A stretch of 64,000 bases of DNA from Ophelia neglecta (taxonomy: Eukaryota), in contig OZ260662.1 in the NCBI GenBank assembly GCA_965285935.1, forward strand, positions 88,970,001-89,034,000. The letters run 5' to 3'. The notes below the pieces were generated by a model. The model was not told the origin of the DNA and did not search any database. It saw only the letters and a list, made by a program, of their open reading frames with translations. The position numbers and the translations under genes were made by a program. Each line of letters begins with the position of its first letter. Within the stretch, counting starts at the first letter, position 1. Positions 23,663 through 38,161 of this stretch are shown piece after piece.

Positions 23663-25266
23663 TAATTTAAGTAATGCAGTCATCTTCACAAGATGGGAAC
23701 CATACAAGTTAATGTTTTTTCATTTATTTTCATTCCATTTTTCCTAAAACAAATTACGATCTGTATTTTAAACCAACAAAAAATGTAACAGGGCATTATA
23801 TTATGCAATTCTCATATTCTAATTTCCAGATGGAAATATGTTTTCAAATGGCATCTTAGACTTTTACTATTTTTGTCAAATAACGTGCTCACATCAGTTG
23901 CTCTTTTCTAAAAACCCTTATTGATAAATGATTTTAAAGTTTAATGTATATGTTTAGCGTCTATCCCAAAGGGCGTATTACTTATGGCATCTGATTCCCT
24001 TTAGACAGATATGTGATTTATAACTAAATGCAGCCGCTGTACCCATTTATCACAGAAAATAATATTGCTTTTAAAACATCACAATAGAAAAGATTTCGGC
24101 GCAGCAGTGTCTCATTTTCTACAAATGCTGAACTGATATCAAATAAGCCAGCCCATGTCTGGAACAATCCATTGCAGGTTCATTCGTTTTTTTACTCGCC
24201 AATTCCAAGCGTTATATCCAGGGCTGTACAACACACTTAATACATTGGGCTATTTTGGAGACCGGCTATCTTTGCTCAATCGAGCAGTTTCCATATTCAT
24301 CCTATCTTGTAAATGCTGCATTAGTTGGCAGGGAGAAAGGCCTTCATGTAAAGGTCAGAGAAGATGTCTTCTTCCATGGAAGTGGGATTAGTTTCGATAA
24401 ACCGCTGTGGCTCTAGGAGGTTGTCGCCGTGTTCTTCAATCAAAGAGGGGACAAGACAGCCATAAAAAGCTACAATAAAATTAAAATAGCTTCTGATAAC
24501 CTCAGTGCTCGCCTACTCTATAATTGATTTATTTGATTTAAATGTATTTGAGCACAGTATATTGAAGCATGGCAGAAGACAGTCCGAAGACGATAATTTG
24601 ATATGTAAGTATCCTTAAAGAAAAGGATGTTGCCAATGTTTCACTCTTCCCGCTGCATAGTAACGGTTATTTCGGCTATGTGGTCTAGTAAAGCTTTGGA
24701 GAGATTTTTACTCAATTTCTCATTTATGACCTTAGCCTTTACAAACACAATGGATAGCTTTTTATAGCATCAGGTGTTGTTGATGATTCACGAGGGACTG
24801 TGTGGGTCAAGCAGGCGACAAGGTCGCATCCAAGGTCAAAGTGTACGTTCGAGAGATGCTAATGAAATGTGAGGCACGTCGGGTAGATCAGCCTCGCCAG
24901 TCTGTTATTCGGCAGCTGGGCAGCCCGAGGGTGGTGCTGTTTGTGGTCTCCGCTTTCTCCCTGATACATCACCTGACGGAAACAAATCGGCGAAGATAGC
25001 AAGCACATCAAATATACATTGGAAGAACATCCGCCATAGCGCCATTGTTAGGCTTTACCACGTGATTGATGTGGAAAGGGCTGGCAATTTTGGGCAAACA
25101 AGCTTGTGACATTCAGGTTTTCTCTGACTGCTCGCCACAAAGTCTCTCTCTATTTATATCAAGCCTGTCATGGGTCAATGTATGGCTCTTGTTGCAATGC
25201 CACTAGCTACTAGTTTTGTCTGAATGTTCATTTTCCTCCTCACCATGTCTTCTTATTTCTTTGCAG

Positions 25267-26071
25267 GTAAAGGTTTATTTAAAAGAGCAATAATTCAGAG
25301 TGGGTCTGCTCTCAGTTCGTGGGCTGTGGCGAACGACCACTTAAAATATACTAGAGAACTGGCTGATCATGTCAACTGTTCGCAGTACTGGGGACAGAGC
25401 GCCCAACTTTTATATTGCTTCAAACAAAAACCATACGAGGAGTTAATTAATGTAGATATCAACCCGCCTAAATATTTCTCCGCCTTTGGGCCTGTGATAG
25501 ACAGACGGAGTGTTCTACCGACGGACGTACGAACTCTGATGGAACAGTCACAGTCCGTGTTTGGCGACACTAACGTACTACTTGGAATAATGAAAAACGA
25601 GGGATTCCTATACTTTAATCAACAAGAAATAACCGACGAGGGGGTGTCCGAGACTAAAATGCATAAAATGATACGGACATATGTGCGAAATCTGTATATG
25701 TATCACCGTCAGAAAATCTACGAGATTCTGCTGCATCACTATAGTGACTGGGAGCAGCCAAAAGACCCTGAAATAATCCGTGACAACCTGATGGAGCTTT
25801 TAGGGGATGGTCAGTTCATCGCGCCCATGATCGAGCTCACCCAGTTCCATGCTGAGTACGCCGCCGATACGTTCATGTATAGTTTTAGCTACCCGTCTCG
25901 GCTGGACACTTACCCGCGGTGGGCGGGGGGTGTGCACGGCGACGACATGACCTACGTGTTCGGCGCCCCGCTCACCGACGGCATCGACCCATTCACCTCT
26001 ACCTTCACCCGCTCGGAGAAGATGTTGACTGAGGCGGTGATGAGGTACTGGACAAACTTCATGAAAAGCGG
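25267..26071 (+). CDS. NLGN: Neuroligin large central exon
   Basis: ttgcAG| acceptor (possible alternative AG 6 nt downstream) and GG|GTGAGT donor; 805 nt, frame consistent with neighbours. Contains LFKRAIIQSGSALSSWA, AFGPVID, KNEG, HGDD.TYVFGAP and VMRYWTNFMKSG. Confidence 0.97.
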
Positions 26072-29000
26072 GTGAGTACGGTAACTGGTATAATATTACC
26101 AATCAACGTAAGCATAAAGACTATATTTTTAATCATTAATAATAGAATAAATCTATATAACGCTTGCTATCGAGTGAAACATAGCATATGGTCGGCATAT
26201 TGTGTCCAATTGCTATGACCCCTCGGCCTGTCAACCATAACAATTGAGTTGATAGACTGTCACTATAGTGTACTCTTCATACCGTTTACCTAACATGCTC
26301 GTTAGAAGGAAAAAGATAGGCTTCCTGGCCTTCGGTACTTGTACCTCTCACCTAACCATCCACCCCGTTCCTCCATCCTTCCTCCCTCGAGACCCTTTCC
26401 TGTTCCCTATCACGACCTCACACTATTTTGTTGTCTATTAAAGCATGTATAGCAATAGGGCTTTTTTAAAGTGAAACAATCATTGACTCTCATTGAGTCT
26501 CACAGAGTTTCAAACAATCGTACGAAACCCCCATGTAAAATTATTATAATGTGTATATAGTAGTATATGTTATTACCCTTGACACTATTTAGAAGGGTGA
26601 CGCTAGGAGCGCTTGGCATATTAGATAAGACCCCATCAATCTGTTTGGCCCGAGTGTATGGCTAAGATATAGGCCATTTAATACCCGGTTCAGTACATTA
26701 TTGGCCTGGTTCTTTATATTAATAATAAATGTGCCAAATATGTAGTTTCAGAGCCAAGAGTAATTCAATGACTTAAGGCAATTCATATTTTGATTTATAT
26801 TATTGGCAATGATTTGTAGTCTTTATGGGGTAGTGCGAAGAAACTAAACACAATGAATTGCTGAAACAAATATAGGTCACTCTTTATTGTTTAATTTACT
26901 ATAAGCTATGTGTTAGTATGTCTTCTTCGTTCAGTATGACCTGCTGATTTGCATGGGGGTATGTACTGATAAGTCAATTAAAGTTAGACGAATGCAATGT
27001 AGGCCTATATAATTTAGGTTCAGATACAAGTTTGTCCCGGAAAATGAATAACTTATATCATCGATAAGTGGTTTTCTGTAAGAATGCTTTTTGGGAACAC
27101 TCATAAAAGAGAAATGTAATGTTCTATGTTAGTCGAGTCATTTCTCTAATTTTTTTTTCATTTGTATGTTTAAAGTAGGACATCATTTAAATTATGCGAG
27201 TTTTTGTGGATATTTTGAATATATAAGTGAGACCATTTTAATAATTTCGTTTGTTACAGTTTGTTTCTTTTTTTTTATATATCAACAAATATTGATTGAT
27301 TTGTGAAATTAGGCACTACTCGGCATTAAGAGACCTTCAGAAAAGTCCCACAAATCCACTCTCCGACAAATGAATTATTCATTTTCTACGTTCGAAGCCT
27401 TAAAGCTCTTTTCGATATAGAAAACATGCGTTTTATCTTCTTAGTCTTAAAATAAGGAAAATGCGGATCGTTGTATTTTGAAGACGGTCCTTTCAATATA
27501 GGAAATATGACAAGTTCATACATTTCAAGCTGAGTTCAATTCAGTCAGAACATTTTGCTTTCAAATTAGTCAGGAGTGCACAGATGATATGTATTAAGTA
27601 TAATGTTTATAGCCGATTATTTTTTTCTACCTGGCTTATTTATCCCATATCCTCTGCCATATAGCCGAGGCTCCATATTCTCTTTTTTCCAAGTATTCTT
27701 GACTAATCTTGATCATCCCACGAGGGCAGATTCGTCACATCCTTCTATAAATACACATCAGTGAGTGTCGGTTTAACCTAAGCAGCTTGCAGCCAGGTAT
27801 TAACTGGCTAATATCTTCCCGTGTTGGTACACAATAGGTGCGCATTTCCTGTTAACGAAGTTTGTAAAAGCCTGCAGGATTAGCCGTATAAAGCCTATAT
27901 ACATTTCGCTTGAAAAAGCTTTCTTGTCGTCGATTTCATTCTCTGGTCGAACTACTTACCTATATACGTGGTAGGCAAGCTATAGAATATGTATGGCTAT
28001 AAATGAACAGAAAGAGGAAGTACTATAGTCCTTTCATGAAGACACCACTGTTCAGTGCCTCTTAATTATAAGTCTCATTTATTCATACCTTGTCTTGTGC
28101 AGAGGAAACATCTATTATGAAGGATATTACGGTCACATTCATAAGCTGAGATTTTGCCTAGAGTAGAAAGGCTGCAAAAGTAACCATTGTACGTAATGAT
28201 GACTATATAGGGTTAAATTATGCCGCCGATATTACTCAGAAATCAAACAAATATTAATATTTATAATTACAATTATATATTATCTCTAAGACATCGATGC
28301 AAAATGTTCGTGTGTGCCAAATCATTTAGTAAAGAGGTTGCCAATTGAAATTGGTCTGTTTCTTCTTGGGAACATGGTTTCCTGCAGTCCCATGACCGAT
28401 TAAGCGGGCAACTCTCCATATCGTGGTTTATTCACAATGCTTAAATCAATAATGGTCGGCCTGGGGAAGTACAGGCTATTGAATAATTCATTGGTAATCA
28501 AAGCTGCAAGCAAAGATGCCTGTTATGATCAGCTGAATATGAGTTGACATCCACTTAGCAAAGACCCGGAAATCACAAATGTTGCTGGTTACATTGTCTT
28601 TTTAACTAGCTCTGTTCTATAGCAGCCGCTACGGACATAAATATGGAATCGAGAGACTTGCCGAAAGGTTATTTCAAACGAAATCTTCTCTATAAGTTAT
28701 GTGTCAGTCCCTGTAGGGAGTGTACGTATGAAAGTTTAAAACAGATCCAACACTATCACAGCCTTTTTTAAATAAAAACAGGTGCTATCTTGACTAGAGT
28801 AGGCCTTATACAATTCTCAGCACAACTTACAAGTATACCGGTGCAGCAGACGACATGGTTGCCTTGGCAATCTGACGGGAAGTCAGAGGATTTTTGTCGT
28901 GGAAGTAATTGAATTATAGACAAGTGATAACCTCGCCGGGATGGGATGTCTCTAGGGGAGAGTGTATCGGTAGTAGTCTCAATTAGACTTGTATAGACGC

Positions 29001-32649: not shown

Positions 32650-32700
32650 GGTTCATTGCTGACATGGACCGCGCGTTACCATGATAAAAATGGCCGTCGC
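32650..32700. mobile_element. Half-copy remnant of the Transib-like MITE family
   Basis: 32670-32700 is 27/31 identical to the reverse complement of 35052-35082. Confidence 0.65.
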
Positions 32701-33280
32701 GACCCTTTAGCTCAGAATTCCAATTTTCTACTATAATTTCACAAGTGTAATCACAATTAAGGTGCACCATGTCTCAATAAAACTTTTTTATTGACACACC
32801 ACATGATTGTATTAAAATCAGGTCAGTAGCAGAACATAAGGCACAGAATATCAAATGCGATTATTGAAACACGGAGACGGATACGATGTAGTGGCTACTT
32901 TCGACTTATCGTGATGCCATGATATTTTTTTTACTGCTCGACTGCTGCATTATGTGATTTAACTTCCTTCTAAAATTGGACATTGGCGTCGGTATGTGCT
33001 TGGCCAGCTTTTATTTCTGTAGCTAGCAAAATAATACAAGTGTCATTTTTCTGTGTCCAACTTGTTGGCTGCTATTTTTTTTCCTGGTAACCCGCGTTGC
33101 CTTTACTAAATAAGCATTCTGAAATAGATCTATACGAAGATATCCATAACATCCAAGAAATTAACATAAATGTCTTCTTATGCCGGAATAATACTCTATG
33201 TTAAAGACTTATTGATATTCTTTTTCTGTTAATAATTCTATTATGTTGGCAAGTCTTTCATTTTTGCTTCTTGGTTGCAG

Positions 33281-33396: not shown

Positions 33397-34973
33397 GTGA
33401 GAAACTATACTGTTTTAGTGTAGTAGATTAATTTTGTTGAAATAAGGCCCCTCCCCTGGGTATTTTCCAATCTGGAATATGTAAGCTGCCATTGTTGTAT
33501 ACACAAAACACTATATATTAGGATACATTTTCTCAATAGATTGTTATTTAAAATGATCTGCAGTTCTTATTGTATTTGTAACCGTTCCTGTACTTATTTT
33601 TTTCAACTTCACAAACAGGTTACGTCTCTCTTTCAGGGAAAGGTATAAATACTCATTGTCAAGCGACCATGACTTTGTTAGAATAAGTATACTCAGAGCA
33701 TGCTGGCATGGCCTCAATGTATTGCTATACATACTAAATTTAGAATAGGACAGTTGCACTAAGACCCTACTAATCTGCTCCTTGGAATTGAGTCCTGGTC
33801 AGACAAATCGAGCGGTTAGGCTGCGGAGCAAACGCGGTTTTTTTACGGGCGGGCATGGCTTCCCGGGAGAACCCTCGGTATCGCCGCAATTTAATTGCTC
33901 GTCTCCCTTGGCTAGTACTGTATAAAGTCCATTTCGTCATGCTTATTAAAAGTCTTATTATAAGAAAATTAGCCCCACGATAATTTTGTGATAAATCAGT
34001 TGATTTCGTCTCAATTGCAATGAATTAAGTGAAATTTAGTGGCGAACATTCAAAGTTGCCATCGTGAATAAATACCATGGTGAAACATGCACTAGAGTGT
34101 ACCTAAGGGATTGTCATAGTGTGCTCTTCACAGCAAAACCGTGGCGTTCATTTGGTTTTACTCTAGTTGAACCGTTTTTAATGTTCTTATCACACCGACT
34201 TGTCGGATTGAGTGTTGGTAGTATTTGATGGGAGGATTGATGACAACTTGACTGTGAGAACTTCATCTAATTCGGCCCTCGCGCGTCAAAGCACACCACG
34301 CAAAGTTATAGTTTACACCGGAATAAAGTACTGAAGTCAACGGAACATCGCATGCCGGCACCGCAAAATGGCGCTCAGCTTGAGTAGAGGCAGCTCAGCT
34401 TTATCACTCAAATCAGTCCTAAATGGTTTATTTCAAAATGATAAGATTTTTGTTAGAATAGCTTTGCATAAATAAGATATTAATTATGTTTGAAAAAATA
34501 AAATTGCAATTGGCTTTACCCTAATGATTAATCAATATAGTTAATGCCGATGCCTGATACAAATGTGTTTGGATGTTTGAACCTTCATCATAAATGCATG
34601 AGCACAGAAAATTACATTGCAGTTCCATTAATCGACTGATAAAGCAATGAATAAATACTACATGTGTAATTGCAAAGCTATTGCTTTGTAACATAAGTAC
34701 CTCGATCAATCCCTAGGTGTTGGCCTGTGGAAAAAAAATTCTAGTGAGAGAGAACTCTTTAAAACTGGGTAAATTGTCAGCAGGATTGCCAGGGGAACTT
34801 GGCAAGCAATACAGCGTGCTCCTAAAAACATGTCTATCCGTTTGTGTAGGTAATATTGTTTATTATCTAAAGTCAAATTGTTATCAAATGCTCAGTAACG
34901 CCGATACAATAAGTGGTCAATAATTAAAAAAAATATTTCCTAGATAGTCTGATTTAATTAGGTCGGTCAACTG

Positions 34974-35108
34974 CACAGTGCTTCATCGGCTGTTTGTAAC
35001 GCGCGTTACCATCAAGGAAAATGGCGGCGTTGGTACGCCGCCATCATATGTGCGACGGCCATTTACCTCTTGGTAACGCGCGTTACCAATAGCCGATAAT
35101 GCACTGTG
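34974..35108. mobile_element. Transib/RAG-like non-autonomous element (MITE), 135 bp
   Basis: Termini CACAGTG...CACTGTG, imperfect TIRs of about 55 bp, and an exact 5-bp TSD AACTG (34969-34973 and 35109-35113). CAC[AT][AG]TG ends with a 5-bp TSD are the Transib/ProtoRAG signature. Confidence 0.82.
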
Positions 35109-37247
35109 AACTGGGTACTGATACCTGAAATTCTCTATTTTATCTTTTACCTGGCCCAGTGTCCCGTCAGGAATTAGATAGAGCAATGGCTTGGTTGGCA
35201 CAATAGGCGAAAAGCGTCTGTCCTTAAAGTAACCGTGGACATCCTGAGGCGCCTAGCAACCATCGCAGACGACAACACGAACGCTGGAATCATAACTGGG
35301 TTCGGGGTTTTTGCCGTCGGAAAACTAGTGCATAATAGAATAACGGATGCTTATTTTTAACGAGCCGAAACTGTTTAATAGCACAGTAATAATCTGTTTA
35401 TTTCCAATGCTTACATAGACCATGAATATATCTCACAATACAATTTAGTATCGAAGCTTAAATATAGAGGCGGGCAGGTATTCTGGAACGCTCTGTGCAT
35501 AGAGTACCAGAAGTAACTATATACTGTTCATTGGTAAAAAGAAAATTATATATTTGATCGTCATATTAATACGTCCTTGTATAGAATTACTGTTTGTTTG
35601 TAATGTAAGATGAGCAAATGTGTGAAAACGTCAATATACACAGAAATATCCATTCTATCCCCTAAACCCAAGCATACACATTCAACCTTTTTAGCAATAT
35701 TAGACTGTGTCAAAAATGACAATAAGGACAATTTAGGTTTTCAGTAGCGTCCTTTAAAACATTGTTGATTTGCGGTAAATTGAACAAAAGGCAGTTCATT
35801 GTCAAAAGTTAAGTCCTTTTGTGCAGACTATAACTTGATCGTATATTAATTAATTATCCAAAATGACAATGCAAAATGAGCAGAGGACGTTAAAATTGTT
35901 CAGATGACCCATGCTTTTCACATATAACCTGCGTTGTCACAGCAATCTGTACTTATTTGTTCCTTTATTGGTGGCTCTCCGTTGGGGTGGTCTAACAGGC
36001 CCCGGTCCATTTCTGCCCCAACTTTCACCCTACAGTCTCGCGATGGCGGTTAAACCAAGCCTGCATGACGTTTTGAATGATTACGATTTACTTGGGCGGT
36101 TTCCCACTGTACTATAATTATTATTACAGCTAATTTGACTCTGCAATGCATCGCTCTTAGAACCAATGAACAACATGGCCCCCGTGAACCACATTAATAT
36201 CGCTTTACCTAAAAAGTATAACCTTGTTTACAAATAAATAAACGTGCAATAAGATTTGAACTTCCTTAAAACTTTGTCCACAGGGCGTACGTTGTACTAA
36301 GATAACTTGGTGGTTTTTTGTATCCTGATTATGACAAAGCTTACTAGTTTCAATCTGCAGGGCTCAGAACTCTAGGCCAGTGATTAACACACCAAGGTGC
36401 CTTCTGTTAAAATTAGACAGAAACTCAGTCATGCATTAACAAACGCCAAAAGTCTTGAAGTATAAACTCCGAATGTGGGTTTTATCGGAATATTGCTCAA
36501 CAGGGTTGGGAAGTTTACTGTTAGAAACTCTAAATCATATCTTTTACAAATTAACAGAGATGACGTAAAGCCCTTCCATCTAATCAATTATATATTTAAT
36601 ATAGGTAAATCGGAAAACATTTAACGAAACATTTACTGAAATCATTATAAATACAACTTTTTGGGTGGTCCCAAGATGCATTGATTTCAAAACTTGCTCA
36701 GCAGTGTTTTTTGCGTTGAACTGCTTCAAGTGAGTGATGATGCATGCTTTAGATGGCGGCAAGACGGGAAATTATTGTGAAGGCTTCTTTTACAATTATT
36801 GCACACTAATCTCACTAACTTTGATAAAAAATTATAATAAATTTAACGTTACCATTATGTACCTAAAGTTATTCTCATCAATTCATCTATAACAATTTGA
36901 TCCTTAGGATAATTAAAAGGAAAAACGTTCAATAATATGCCTTGGTTTTTGAACATGCCAAAATCTAAATTAAATGCTCAAATGGTAAATGCATGACAGG
37001 CTTTGATTTGAGACCACCTAGAAGATTGACCTAGATGGTGTCCTTTATAATGTGGTTTTAATGTCATTGGTTAACGCAAATCGTAACTTGGATGACGTCA
37101 CATGGTACACTGCCTGCCGCCATAGTATAGTTAGCCGTCTAGGTCCACCCTCTAGGTCCCTAATCCGAGTCTTACATGCATTCAGTACTATTTGTTTTTG
37201 ATTTTTATCGGGAGATGTTGGCCTTATCATGTTTTCGCCTGTTTCAG

Positions 37248-38161
37248 GTATGAGACCCATCATACGACACCATTACAGGGGAACCAAAATGGCTCTATGG
37301 CTGGATCTGATACCGAAACTACACAAATCGGACGACCTCTCGCCAAGATATCACCTTCTGGATAACTACGATAATAAAACTACATTCGAGGAGAAGGGGA
37401 CCAAACCTCTCAACTTGAAGGAGCTATTTCCCCACCCTCCAATCCCCCCGAATTCTCCACCCCCACGTTCAACTAGCCCCACTATACCCCCGAGCACCAC
37501 CGCTCTCCCCACTACCACAACGACATTACCTACTACCACCACCACCCGCAGACCCAACCCAAGTACCCACTGGCCCCATTCGCGGTCACGCCGCACCACA
37601 ACATTACCTGGCTGGCCTCCAAAAACTACTATCGGACCAACAGCCGCCGGTATGACCGCTAAAGACTCTACATTATCGCTCAGTGTTACTATAGCAGTAG
37701 GCTGCTCTTTATTGTTTCTCAACATTCTCATTTTCGCTGGCGTTTACTACCAAAAAGACCGAATGCGCATGGAGATGAAGATGCGCAAGCGTGAACTAGA
37801 GAAGGAACAACAGGAGGCGGCGCAGGGGGCGGATAGTGACCACCTGAAAAGTAGTACGGGTCCGGAGACGGACACCAACAGTTCCTCGATGGCCACACCG
37901 CCTATCCCACCCTCGATATCGCGGCACCAGATACAGCCGCAAATGACTACGCTACCGTACCCTAATAAGGGGCCGATACCCGTCATGCCTCCTCAGGCAC
38001 CCTACCATACCACCCCCTCGCGGCGTTCTCCCCGCCACCTTCGCCACATGGACCACCACACTCACGTGCTCGACCATGATGGCATGCTCAAACATTCTTC
38101 TTCCGCAGATTCCGGAACTGACGTCAATAATCACCATGGTAACCCATCGACAGTAGTATAG
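37248..38161 (+). CDS. NLGN: Neuroligin terminal coding exon: dimerisation helix, O-glycosylated stalk, TM helix, cytoplasmic tail, PDZ ligand
   Basis: tttcAG| acceptor. Encodes GMRPIIRHHYRGTKMALWLDLIPKLH, a P/T-rich stalk, LSVTIAVGCSLLFLNILIFAGVYYQKD (neuroligin TM signature) and ends HGNPSTVV* (class I PDZ motif T-x-V). Confidence 0.97.

What the first reader, a model, noticed from the sequence alone, without database searches (positions are those of the whole stretch)
34969..35113. Transib/RAG-like MITE with exact RSS-heptamer ends and 5-bp TSD
Seen: AACTG|CACAGTG...CACTGTG|AACTG, 135 bp, with arms CACAGTGC(TTC/ATT)ATCGGCT(G/A)TT(T/G)GTAACGCGCGTTACCA. Known: CACAGTG is the V(D)J recombination-signal heptamer, and CAC-heptamer TIRs with 5-bp TSDs define Transib and ProtoRAG/RAG-like transposons, the ancestors of RAG1/2. 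There is no ACAAAAACC nonamer at 12 or 23 spacing. GCCAT-containing motifs are present internally but not in the orientation I recall for ProtoRAG TR5. Inference: this genome hosts or hosted a Transib or RAG-like transposase, and these TIRs can be used as bait to find it. The intact TSD and a second remnant at 32650-32700 indicate a family.
Basis: partly seen in the sequence, partly recalled or inferred. Interest (0 to 1): 0.8.

Follow-up and report, generated by a model that had tools for sequence, protein, structure and literature searches.

The report
Old Transib-type MITE in neuroligin intron
This is a 135-bp dead miniature DNA transposon, one copy of an old family with several hundred ends, whose ends and 5-bp target duplication match the Transib/RAG group of jumping genes; that is a known kind of element, and I could not tie it to the RAG1-like genes that this genome also carries.

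Summary
Window 34974-35108 is a 135-bp hairpin-forming element. It starts CACAGTG, ends CACTGTG, and is flanked by AACTG on both sides.

It belongs to a real, old family:
- A 19-base end probe finds 233 sites in the 762-Mb genome, against 0 for the control.
- The arms are about 185 bp and average 83% identity to their consensus.
- Better-preserved paired copies are mostly about 620-660 bp.

Two independent tests support a 5-bp duplication:
- In 9 paired copies, flank bases agree only at length 5 (29/45, against 14.4 ± 3 when permuted).
- 30 distinct ends share a palindromic target, c|AWNWT|g, confined to those positions.

The genome does hold RAG1-family sequences (17 Pfam hits, best E 1e-76). 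Two of these sit in convergent RAG1-like/RAG2-like pairs.

The link to a transposase is not shown. The end sequence differs from published RAG-like (RAGL-B) ends after CAC, so a Transib-type partner, possibly extinct, is the likelier mobiliser.

No empty-site allele was seen. First readers of this scan flagged look-alike mini-elements elsewhere in this genome (s1-739956, s1-733691); whether they are the same family is unchecked.

Verdict: an ordinary new member of a known kind.

The parts
34969..34973 (.). Left copy of the 5-bp target-site duplication, AACTG
   Evidence: Read directly; identical to 35109-35113.
34974..35108 (.). The 135-bp MITE: an internally deleted copy made of two arm tips fused head to head
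   Evidence: The left arm aligns to family consensus positions 1 to about 55 and the right arm to 1 to about 68. It folds as a strong hairpin. No Rfam family reaches its threshold.
34974..35029 (+). Left inverted arm, starting with the heptamer CACAGTG (34974-34980)
   Evidence: pair I1; profile match E = 8.7e-16.
34995..35010 (.). Left copy of the family's 16-bp CpG palindrome (one mismatch), 14 bp inside the heptamer
   Evidence: The palindrome GGTAACGCGCGTTACC occupies arm positions 22-37 in the consensus.
35021..35044 (.). Central short hairpin formed where the two arm tips were joined
   Evidence: I6: 10 nt, 100% complementary.
35053..35108 (-). Right inverted arm, ending with CACTGTG (35102-35108)
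   Evidence: profile match E = 5.1e-17.
35072..35087 (.). Right copy of the 16-bp palindrome, exact
   Evidence: Listed as an exact genome hit at C2:89005072-89005087.
35109..35113 (.). Right copy of the 5-bp target-site duplication, AACTG
32670..32724 (+). Weak fragment of a second arm of the same family (arm positions 27-82, no terminus)
   Evidence: nhmmer E = 6.4e-5; sequence.

Best explanation
The element is a fixed, long-dead, non-autonomous cut-and-paste DNA transposon (MITE) in an intron of a neuroligin gene. It is a deletion derivative that keeps only the outer 55-68 bp of each arm. Better-preserved paired copies of the family are mostly about 620-660 bp, with arms of about 185 bp.

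Shown: sharp CACAGTG termini; several hundred ends in the genome; a 5-bp target duplication; insertion into a palindromic AT-rich target, c|AWNWT|g; and a 16-bp CpG palindrome at a fixed 14-bp distance from the heptamer in both arms, with the same GGTAACG motif recurring deeper in the arms.

Inferred: it was moved in trans by a Transib-superfamily (RAG1-core-type DDE) transposase. Such an enzyme would bind the heptamer and the subterminal motifs, cut at the flank/heptamer border, and insert with a 5-bp stagger. That partner was probably a plain Transib rather than the RAG1-like/RAG2-like (RAGL-B) elements of this genome. It is probably now extinct or decayed, given that the arms average 83% identity to their consensus.
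For: - Termini and duplication read directly.
- Family size: 233 end-probe hits against 0 control, 248 against 42 for a 12-mer, and 234 first-look candidates for one full arm.
- Homology begins exactly at CACAGTG in 25 or more copies; 21 of 30 distinct ends carry the exact heptamer.
- Duplication length: in 9 paired copies the flank bases match 29/45 at length 5, against 14.4 ± 3.0 when partners are permuted (0 of the permutations reach it). Lengths 2-4 and 6-9 stay near the permuted background; the nearest is length 7, at 19/63 with 5% of permutations reaching it.
- Target logo: A at -5 (18/30, p = 7e-4), T at -1 (19/30, p = 2e-4), C at -6 (14/30, p = 7e-4), and nothing further out. This is a self-complementary pattern, as expected for a 5-bp staggered cut.
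- Literature: Transib is described as the only eukaryotic superfamily with 5-bp duplications, with CACAATG-type ends, and some Transib families have targets of the same style, such as cCASTGg (PMC1131882).
- The genome encodes RAG1-family sequences: 17 PF12940 hits, best 265 bits.
- Age: arms average 83% identity to consensus, and contigs of three runs of one sample span the insertion with no joint.
Against: - No autonomous copy was found. No end-probe, palindrome or arm hit lay near the RAG1-like loci on contigs C1, C2, C7 or C8 in the listed results.
- I could not read the RAG1-like loci, so their ends are unknown to me.
- No A-rich nonamer-like block sits at a 12- or 23-bp spacing.
- The target is AT-rich, whereas Transib and RAG targets are usually reported as GC-rich (PMC1131882).
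- Arms of 185 bp are much longer than the roughly 38-bp termini described for Transib.
- 13 of 20 arms read had no partner arm within 10 kb. I attribute this to decay, but that is not proven.
Confidence: 0.75

Rival explanations
1. The family is a non-autonomous derivative of the RAG-like (RAGL-B, RAG1-like plus RAG2-like) transposons of the same genome and was moved by that two-protein transposase.
For: The genome has RAG1-like and RAG2-like hits side by side, convergent on C1 (15.62 Mb) and C12 (73.09 Mb). RAGL elements also make 5-bp duplications and start with CAC, and non-autonomous RAGL elements have been reported (PMC7204232).
Against: The published protostome RAGL end consensus, CACTWMCAAACKTYKBB, has conserved A's at positions 8-10 (PMC7204232). 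It matches this family (CACAGTGCTTCATCGG) only in CAC. No family end was listed near either convergent pair on C1, and none of the exact hits lay near the C12 pair.
Confidence: 0.12
2. The family belongs to another DDE superfamily with CAC-type ends (CACTA/Chapaev/Mirage group), or to an undescribed one that also makes 5-bp duplications.
For: The ends start with CAC, as in CACTA-type elements. No RAG1-type partner has been shown. Scan notes suggest Chapaev-like zinc-domain genes in this genome (s1-748385, unchecked).
Against: Duplications of 2, 3 or 4 bp, which define the CACTA, Chapaev and Mirage groups by established classification, are at background in the 9 pairs; only 5 bp stands out. The full heptamer is CACAGTG, not CACTA. 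Transib is described as the only superfamily with 5-bp duplications (PMC1131882).
Confidence: 0.1
3. It is a chance inverted repeat, or a hairpin RNA gene, and not a transposon.
For: It folds as a strong hairpin and gives a weak sub-threshold match to a microRNA precursor model (24 bits against a cut-off of 56).
Against: Hundreds of copies with unrelated flanks and a sharp common boundary; flanking duplications; no Rfam family reaches its threshold.
Confidence: 0.01

Closest known systems
Non-autonomous Transib elements (Transib-N families; Kapitonov and Jurka 2005, PMC1131882)
   Same: CAC-heptamer termini close to the RSS heptamer, a 5-bp target duplication, a family-specific palindromic target flanked by c...g (compare cCASTGg), many short copies, and few or no coding copies.
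   Different: The arms are about 185 bp rather than about 38 bp. There is no A-rich nonamer-like block at a 12- or 23-bp spacing; instead a 16-bp CpG palindrome sits 14 bp from the heptamer. The target is AT-rich. No Transib transposase has been tied to these ends.
RAGL-B / ProtoRAG transposons and their non-autonomous derivatives (PMC7204232, PMC10462144)
   Same: A 5-bp duplication, ends starting with CAC, and RAG1-like/RAG2-like convergent pairs present in the same genome.
   Different: Heptamer CACAGTG followed by CTTCATCGG, instead of CACTATG/CACTWMC followed by the A-rich TR2 block. No family end was found beside the RAG1-like/RAG2-like pairs.
V(D)J recombination signal sequence
   Same: The first seven bases are the consensus RSS heptamer CACAGTG.
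   Different: No nonamer and no 12/23 asymmetry (both arms carry the palindrome at the same offset). It is a mobile repeat in an invertebrate intron, not a signal beside a receptor gene segment.

Membership tests
Transib superfamily (non-autonomous member) | 5-bp target-site duplication | tested here: met
   The window copy has AACTG on both sides. Another copy has AACAT on both sides and a third has AACAT/GACAT. Across 9 pairs, 29/45 bases match at length 5 only, which no permutation reaches. The palindromic target logo is limited to -6..-1.
Transib superfamily (non-autonomous member) | Termini beginning CAC with an RSS-like heptamer (CACAATG / CACAGTG type) | tested here: met
   21 of 30 distinct ends are exactly CACAGTG and the rest are single-base variants. 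The homology boundary is sharp.
Transib superfamily (non-autonomous member) | A-rich nonamer-like block about 12 or 23 bp from the heptamer (seen in the consensus of many but not all families) | tested here: not met
   In the consensus arm, positions 20-28 and 31-39 are not A-rich. The nearest A-run starts at position 45.
Transib superfamily (non-autonomous member) | Autonomous partner with the same ends encoding a RAG1-core-type DDE transposase | tested here: inconclusive
   RAG1-family sequences exist in the genome. However, no family end was listed near them, and their DNA could not be fetched.
RAGL-B / ProtoRAG-type transposon (non-autonomous member) | End of the form CACTATG / CACTWMC followed by a conserved A-rich TR2 block | tested here: not met
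   The family end is CACAGTGCTTCATCGG, against the consensus CACTWMCAAACKTYKBB quoted in PMC7204232.
RAGL-B / ProtoRAG-type transposon (non-autonomous member) | Convergent RAG1-like/RAG2-like gene pair bounded by the same ends | tested here: inconclusive
   Pairs exist on C1 and C12. No family end is listed beside them, and their ends were not read.
CACTA / Chapaev / Mirage group | Target duplication of 2, 3 or 4 bp | tested here: not met
   Matches at lengths 2, 3 and 4 are 4/18, 10/27 and 8/36, all at or below the permuted level.
MITE (structural class) | Short, non-coding, inverted arms, flanking duplication, many copies | tested here: met
   Copy sizes of 135-1324 bp; no reading frame of 110 aa or more overlaps the 135-bp element; hundreds of ends.

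The most novel reading that the evidence does not exclude
The family marks a Transib-clade lineage whose transposase recognises a different bipartite signal: the exact RSS heptamer plus a 16-bp CpG palindrome at a 14-bp spacing, symmetric on both ends. On this reading the palindrome replaces the heptamer-spacer-nonamer signal, and the enzyme integrates into an AT-rich palindrome, c|AWNWT|g. If the partner enzyme could be found, it would be a natural variant for studying how the second DNA-binding module of RAG1-type enzymes evolved.
Probability: 0.15. Interest if true: 0.45.

Novelty: new member of a known kind. Interest (0 to 1): 0.3.

Why it matters
The finding adds a well-characterised, probably Transib-type MITE family to an invertebrate genome that also carries RAG-like transposons. 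I established its end consensus, arm length, duplication length and target preference.

It shows that two kinds of CAC-ended, 5-bp-duplicating elements probably coexisted here with different end sequences. That is useful for annotating this genome and for anyone cataloguing the end signals read by RAG1-type enzymes.

It does not change the picture of RAG evolution. Transib MITEs and invertebrate RAG-like transposons are already described, and this copy is old and inert.

Tried and rejected
- **Bait search for a coding copy.** I fetched 10 kb inward from 20 arms. Only 7 had a partner arm. The long reading frames in these 10-kb stretches, 8 of the 10 scanned from one-ended loci, were host genes (tubulin cofactor C, a hexose-6-phosphate-dehydrogenase-like gene, a receptor, a tetraspanin) or reverse transcriptases. 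None was a transposase.
- **Coordinate test against the RAG1-like loci.** I used the 19-mer with up to 2 mismatches, the exact 16-bp palindrome, a full arm as a BLAST query and the exact 12-mer. The nearest listed hit to any RAG1-like locus covered by those lists was about 0.7 Mb away. The lists are capped at 100 rows or 40 scored candidates, so C9 and C12 are only partly covered and diverged ends would be missed.
- **Fetching the RAG1-like loci.** I did not try to read them another way.
- **Interior of the 1324-bp copy as a lead to the parent element.** It turned out to be a nested young repeat of about 677 bp from another family.
- **Empty-site allele.** None was found in the contigs of three runs, all from one sample that may be the assembly's own.
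- **SINE or RNA-gene reading.** No Rfam family reaches its threshold.
- **The neighbouring 2.2-kb element as a RAGL relative.** Its 14-base end is not enriched in the genome (44 hits against 28 control).
- **Large protein searches.** Not used, because the finding encodes no protein.

Full report
**Observation.** The sequence is as described. AACTG lies at 34969-34973. A 135-bp element at 34974-35108 begins CACAGTG and ends CACTGTG. AACTG recurs at 35109-35113. The repeat finder gives inverted arms of 56 nt, 79% complementary, separated by 23 nt. As single-stranded DNA the element folds at -51 kcal/mol, with z = -12.4 against shuffles. No Rfam family reaches its threshold; the best is a hairpin-like 24 bits against a cut-off of 56.

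**Setting.** The window is C2:88970001-89034000 of a 762-Mb animal genome. The element lies between a carboxylesterase-type exon at 25224-26075 and a frame at 37229-38161 that reads as a last exon, with a proline/threonine-rich stalk, a hydrophobic stretch that looks like a membrane span, and a tail. I read this as an intron of a neuroligin gene on the + strand.

**It is a family.**
- The 135 bp used as a query found arm-length matches at dozens of places with unrelated flanks.
- Aligned on their ends, 25 or more copies share sequence from exactly CACAGTG inward and nothing outward.
- The 19-base end with up to 2 mismatches occurs 233 times against 0 for the reversed control. The first 12 bases occur 248 times against 42.
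- With one full arm as query, 234 candidates were seen. Nearly all of the arm matches among the 40 scored candidates stop between query positions 155 and 188, most of them at 182-188, so the arm is a module of about 185 bp.
- Twenty arms average 83% identity to their consensus, range 80-88%. The family is old.
- Paired copies seen by coordinates or in hand span 135-1324 bp, and many cluster at about 620-660 bp.
- The 1324-bp copy owes its length to a nested young repeat of about 677 bp from another family.
- The window copy is a deletion derivative. Its left arm covers consensus positions 1 to about 55 and its right arm 1 to about 68.

**Duplication length.** Three copies show a 5-bp duplication plainly: AACTG/AACTG, AACAT/AACAT and AACAT/GACAT. 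Because the family is old, I tested all nine paired copies in hand together. I compared the last k bases of the left flank with the first k of the right.
- At k = 5, 29 of 45 positions agree. Re-pairing flanks between copies gives 14.4 ± 3.0, and none of the permutations reach 29.
- At k = 2-4 and 6-9 the agreement stays near the permuted level; the nearest is k = 7, at 19/63 with 5% of permutations reaching it.

A second, independent line uses all 30 distinct ends, including one-ended copies. Reading toward the heptamer, position -5 is A in 18/30 (p = 7e-4), -1 is T in 19/30 (p = 2e-4), -6 is C in 14/30 (p = 7e-4), and -4 and -2 are mostly A or T. Positions -7 to -10 are unremarkable. The pattern c|AWNWT|g is self-complementary and exactly five bases wide, as expected for a 5-bp staggered insertion.

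**Other anatomy.**
- The exact heptamer CACAGTG is present at 21 of 30 ends.
- A 16-bp CpG palindrome, GGTAACGCGCGTTACC, occupies arm positions 22-37 in both arms, so there is no 12/23-type asymmetry. It occurs 37 times exactly in the genome against 0 control.
- The GGTAACG motif recurs deeper in several copies, at about 200-270.
- There is no A-rich nonamer-like block at a 12- or 23-bp spacing.

**Does the genome host the enzyme?** A six-frame search with Pfam RAG1 (PF12940) gave 17 matches. The best is 265 bits, covering model positions 23-636, at C8:1035740-1037647. Several others are broken by stops or split. Pfam RAG2 (PF03089) gave three weak matches, each beside a RAG1 hit. They are convergent and about 2.5 kb apart on C1 (15.62 Mb) and C12 (73.09 Mb), and 10 kb apart and divergent on C8. 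So RAG-like two-gene elements are present. Other RAG1-like hits have no RAG2-like neighbour and may be plain Transib. An earlier follow-up of this scan reached the same reading for the two-gene elements (s1-732026), and another mentions a young RAG1/Transib-related transposon (s1-746309). I did not check either beyond the coordinates above.

**The link is not shown.** I did not try to obtain them by another route.
- By coordinates, none of the listed hits of four probes lies near a RAG1-like locus on the contigs those lists covered. The nearest is about 0.7 Mb away.
- These lists are capped and miss diverged ends, so this is a weak negative.
- The long reading frames in the 10-kb stretches inward from the arms, mostly at one-ended copies, are host genes and retroelements only.
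- No joint that would indicate an empty allele appears in the contigs of three runs of a single sample, and long contigs run through the insertion.

**Comparison with what is known.** Kapitonov and Jurka describe Transib as the only eukaryotic DNA-transposon superfamily with 5-bp duplications. They give it a CACAATG-type heptamer end, many non-autonomous families, and family-specific targets such as cCASTGg (PMC1131882). Autonomous copies are typically one or a few per genome (PMC4411706). Protostome RAG-like elements have the end consensus CACTWMCAAACKTYKBB with conserved A's at positions 8-10, and 5-bp duplications (PMC7204232). The family here shares only CAC with that consensus, while six of its seven heptamer bases match the Transib consensus and all seven match the RSS. 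The CACTA/Chapaev/Mirage group is set apart by duplications of 2-4 bp (established classification), which the data reject.

**Verdict.** The most likely reading (about 0.75) is an old Transib-type MITE family moved in trans by a RAG1-core-type transposase that is now decayed or lost. The window copy is a fixed deletion derivative in a neuroligin intron.
- A derivative of the resident RAGL-B elements is possible, about 0.12.
- Another superfamily is possible, about 0.1.

Three features are unusual for Transib: the 185-bp arms, the heptamer-plus-palindrome layout and the AT-rich target. They justify calling this a new member of a known kind, not a new kind.

One thing remains unexplained. 13 of 20 arms have no partner within 10 kb. 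Three of these break off within a few bases of each other at about 290-310 bp.

Noticed in passing
It has 14-bp inverted ends, CACTGTAAACACAA, and its flanks ATGTA/ATATA agree at 4 of 5 positions. It could therefore be another 5-bp-duplicating CAC-ended element. Its A-run sits roughly where RAG-like ends carry theirs. The 14-mer is not enriched in the genome (44 hits against 28 control).
   Followed up: partly
genome C1:15622061-15626774, C12:73089754-73094403, C8:1025723-1037647 (not in the window): RAG1-family and RAG2-family Pfam hits lie side by side. They are convergent and about 2.5 kb apart on C1 and C12, and divergent and 10 kb apart on C8. Further RAG1-like hits without a RAG2-like neighbour are at C8:1113310, C12:73602421, C2:83633431 and C1:17712929.
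   Followed up: partly
L048:422-1098 (C1:112605534-112606210): A young, high-copy repeat of about 677 bp is nested inside an old copy of the MITE. It has 452 first-look candidates, and the 40 scored copies are 90-99% identical. Its kind was not determined.
   Followed up: no
L030, L034, L044 (positions about 290-330 of each, oriented from the arm): Three independent one-ended copies of one subfamily lose homology within a few bases of each other, just after CCTTGATAT. A fourth member (L032) continues to a partner arm. This could be a recurrent breakpoint or a second kind of end.
   Followed up: no
genome C1:26515543-26694435: The 14-mer probe hit ten times on one strand. From the fourth hit on, the spacings repeat (14575, 31077, 17289 bp), which points to a tandem segmental array with a unit of about 63 kb.
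   Followed up: no
genome C7:10864344, 10881861, 10900177: Three family ends lie in the same orientation about 17.5-18.3 kb apart, suggesting that a MITE copy was carried along in a tandem duplication.
   Followed up: no
window 25224-26075 and 37229-38161: A neuroligin-type gene on the + strand: a carboxylesterase-fold exon and a last exon that reads as a stalk, a membrane span and a cytoplasmic tail ending in STVV. The intron between them, about 11 kb long, holds both CAC-ended elements and the arm remnant.
   Followed up: partly
L040:7476-9164 (-) and L036:4318-5346 (+): Long uninterrupted frames for a G6PD-C plus 6-phosphogluconolactonase fusion (hexose-6-phosphate-dehydrogenase type) and for tubulin cofactor C. 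These are host genes lying within 10 kb of one-ended MITE arms.
   Followed up: no
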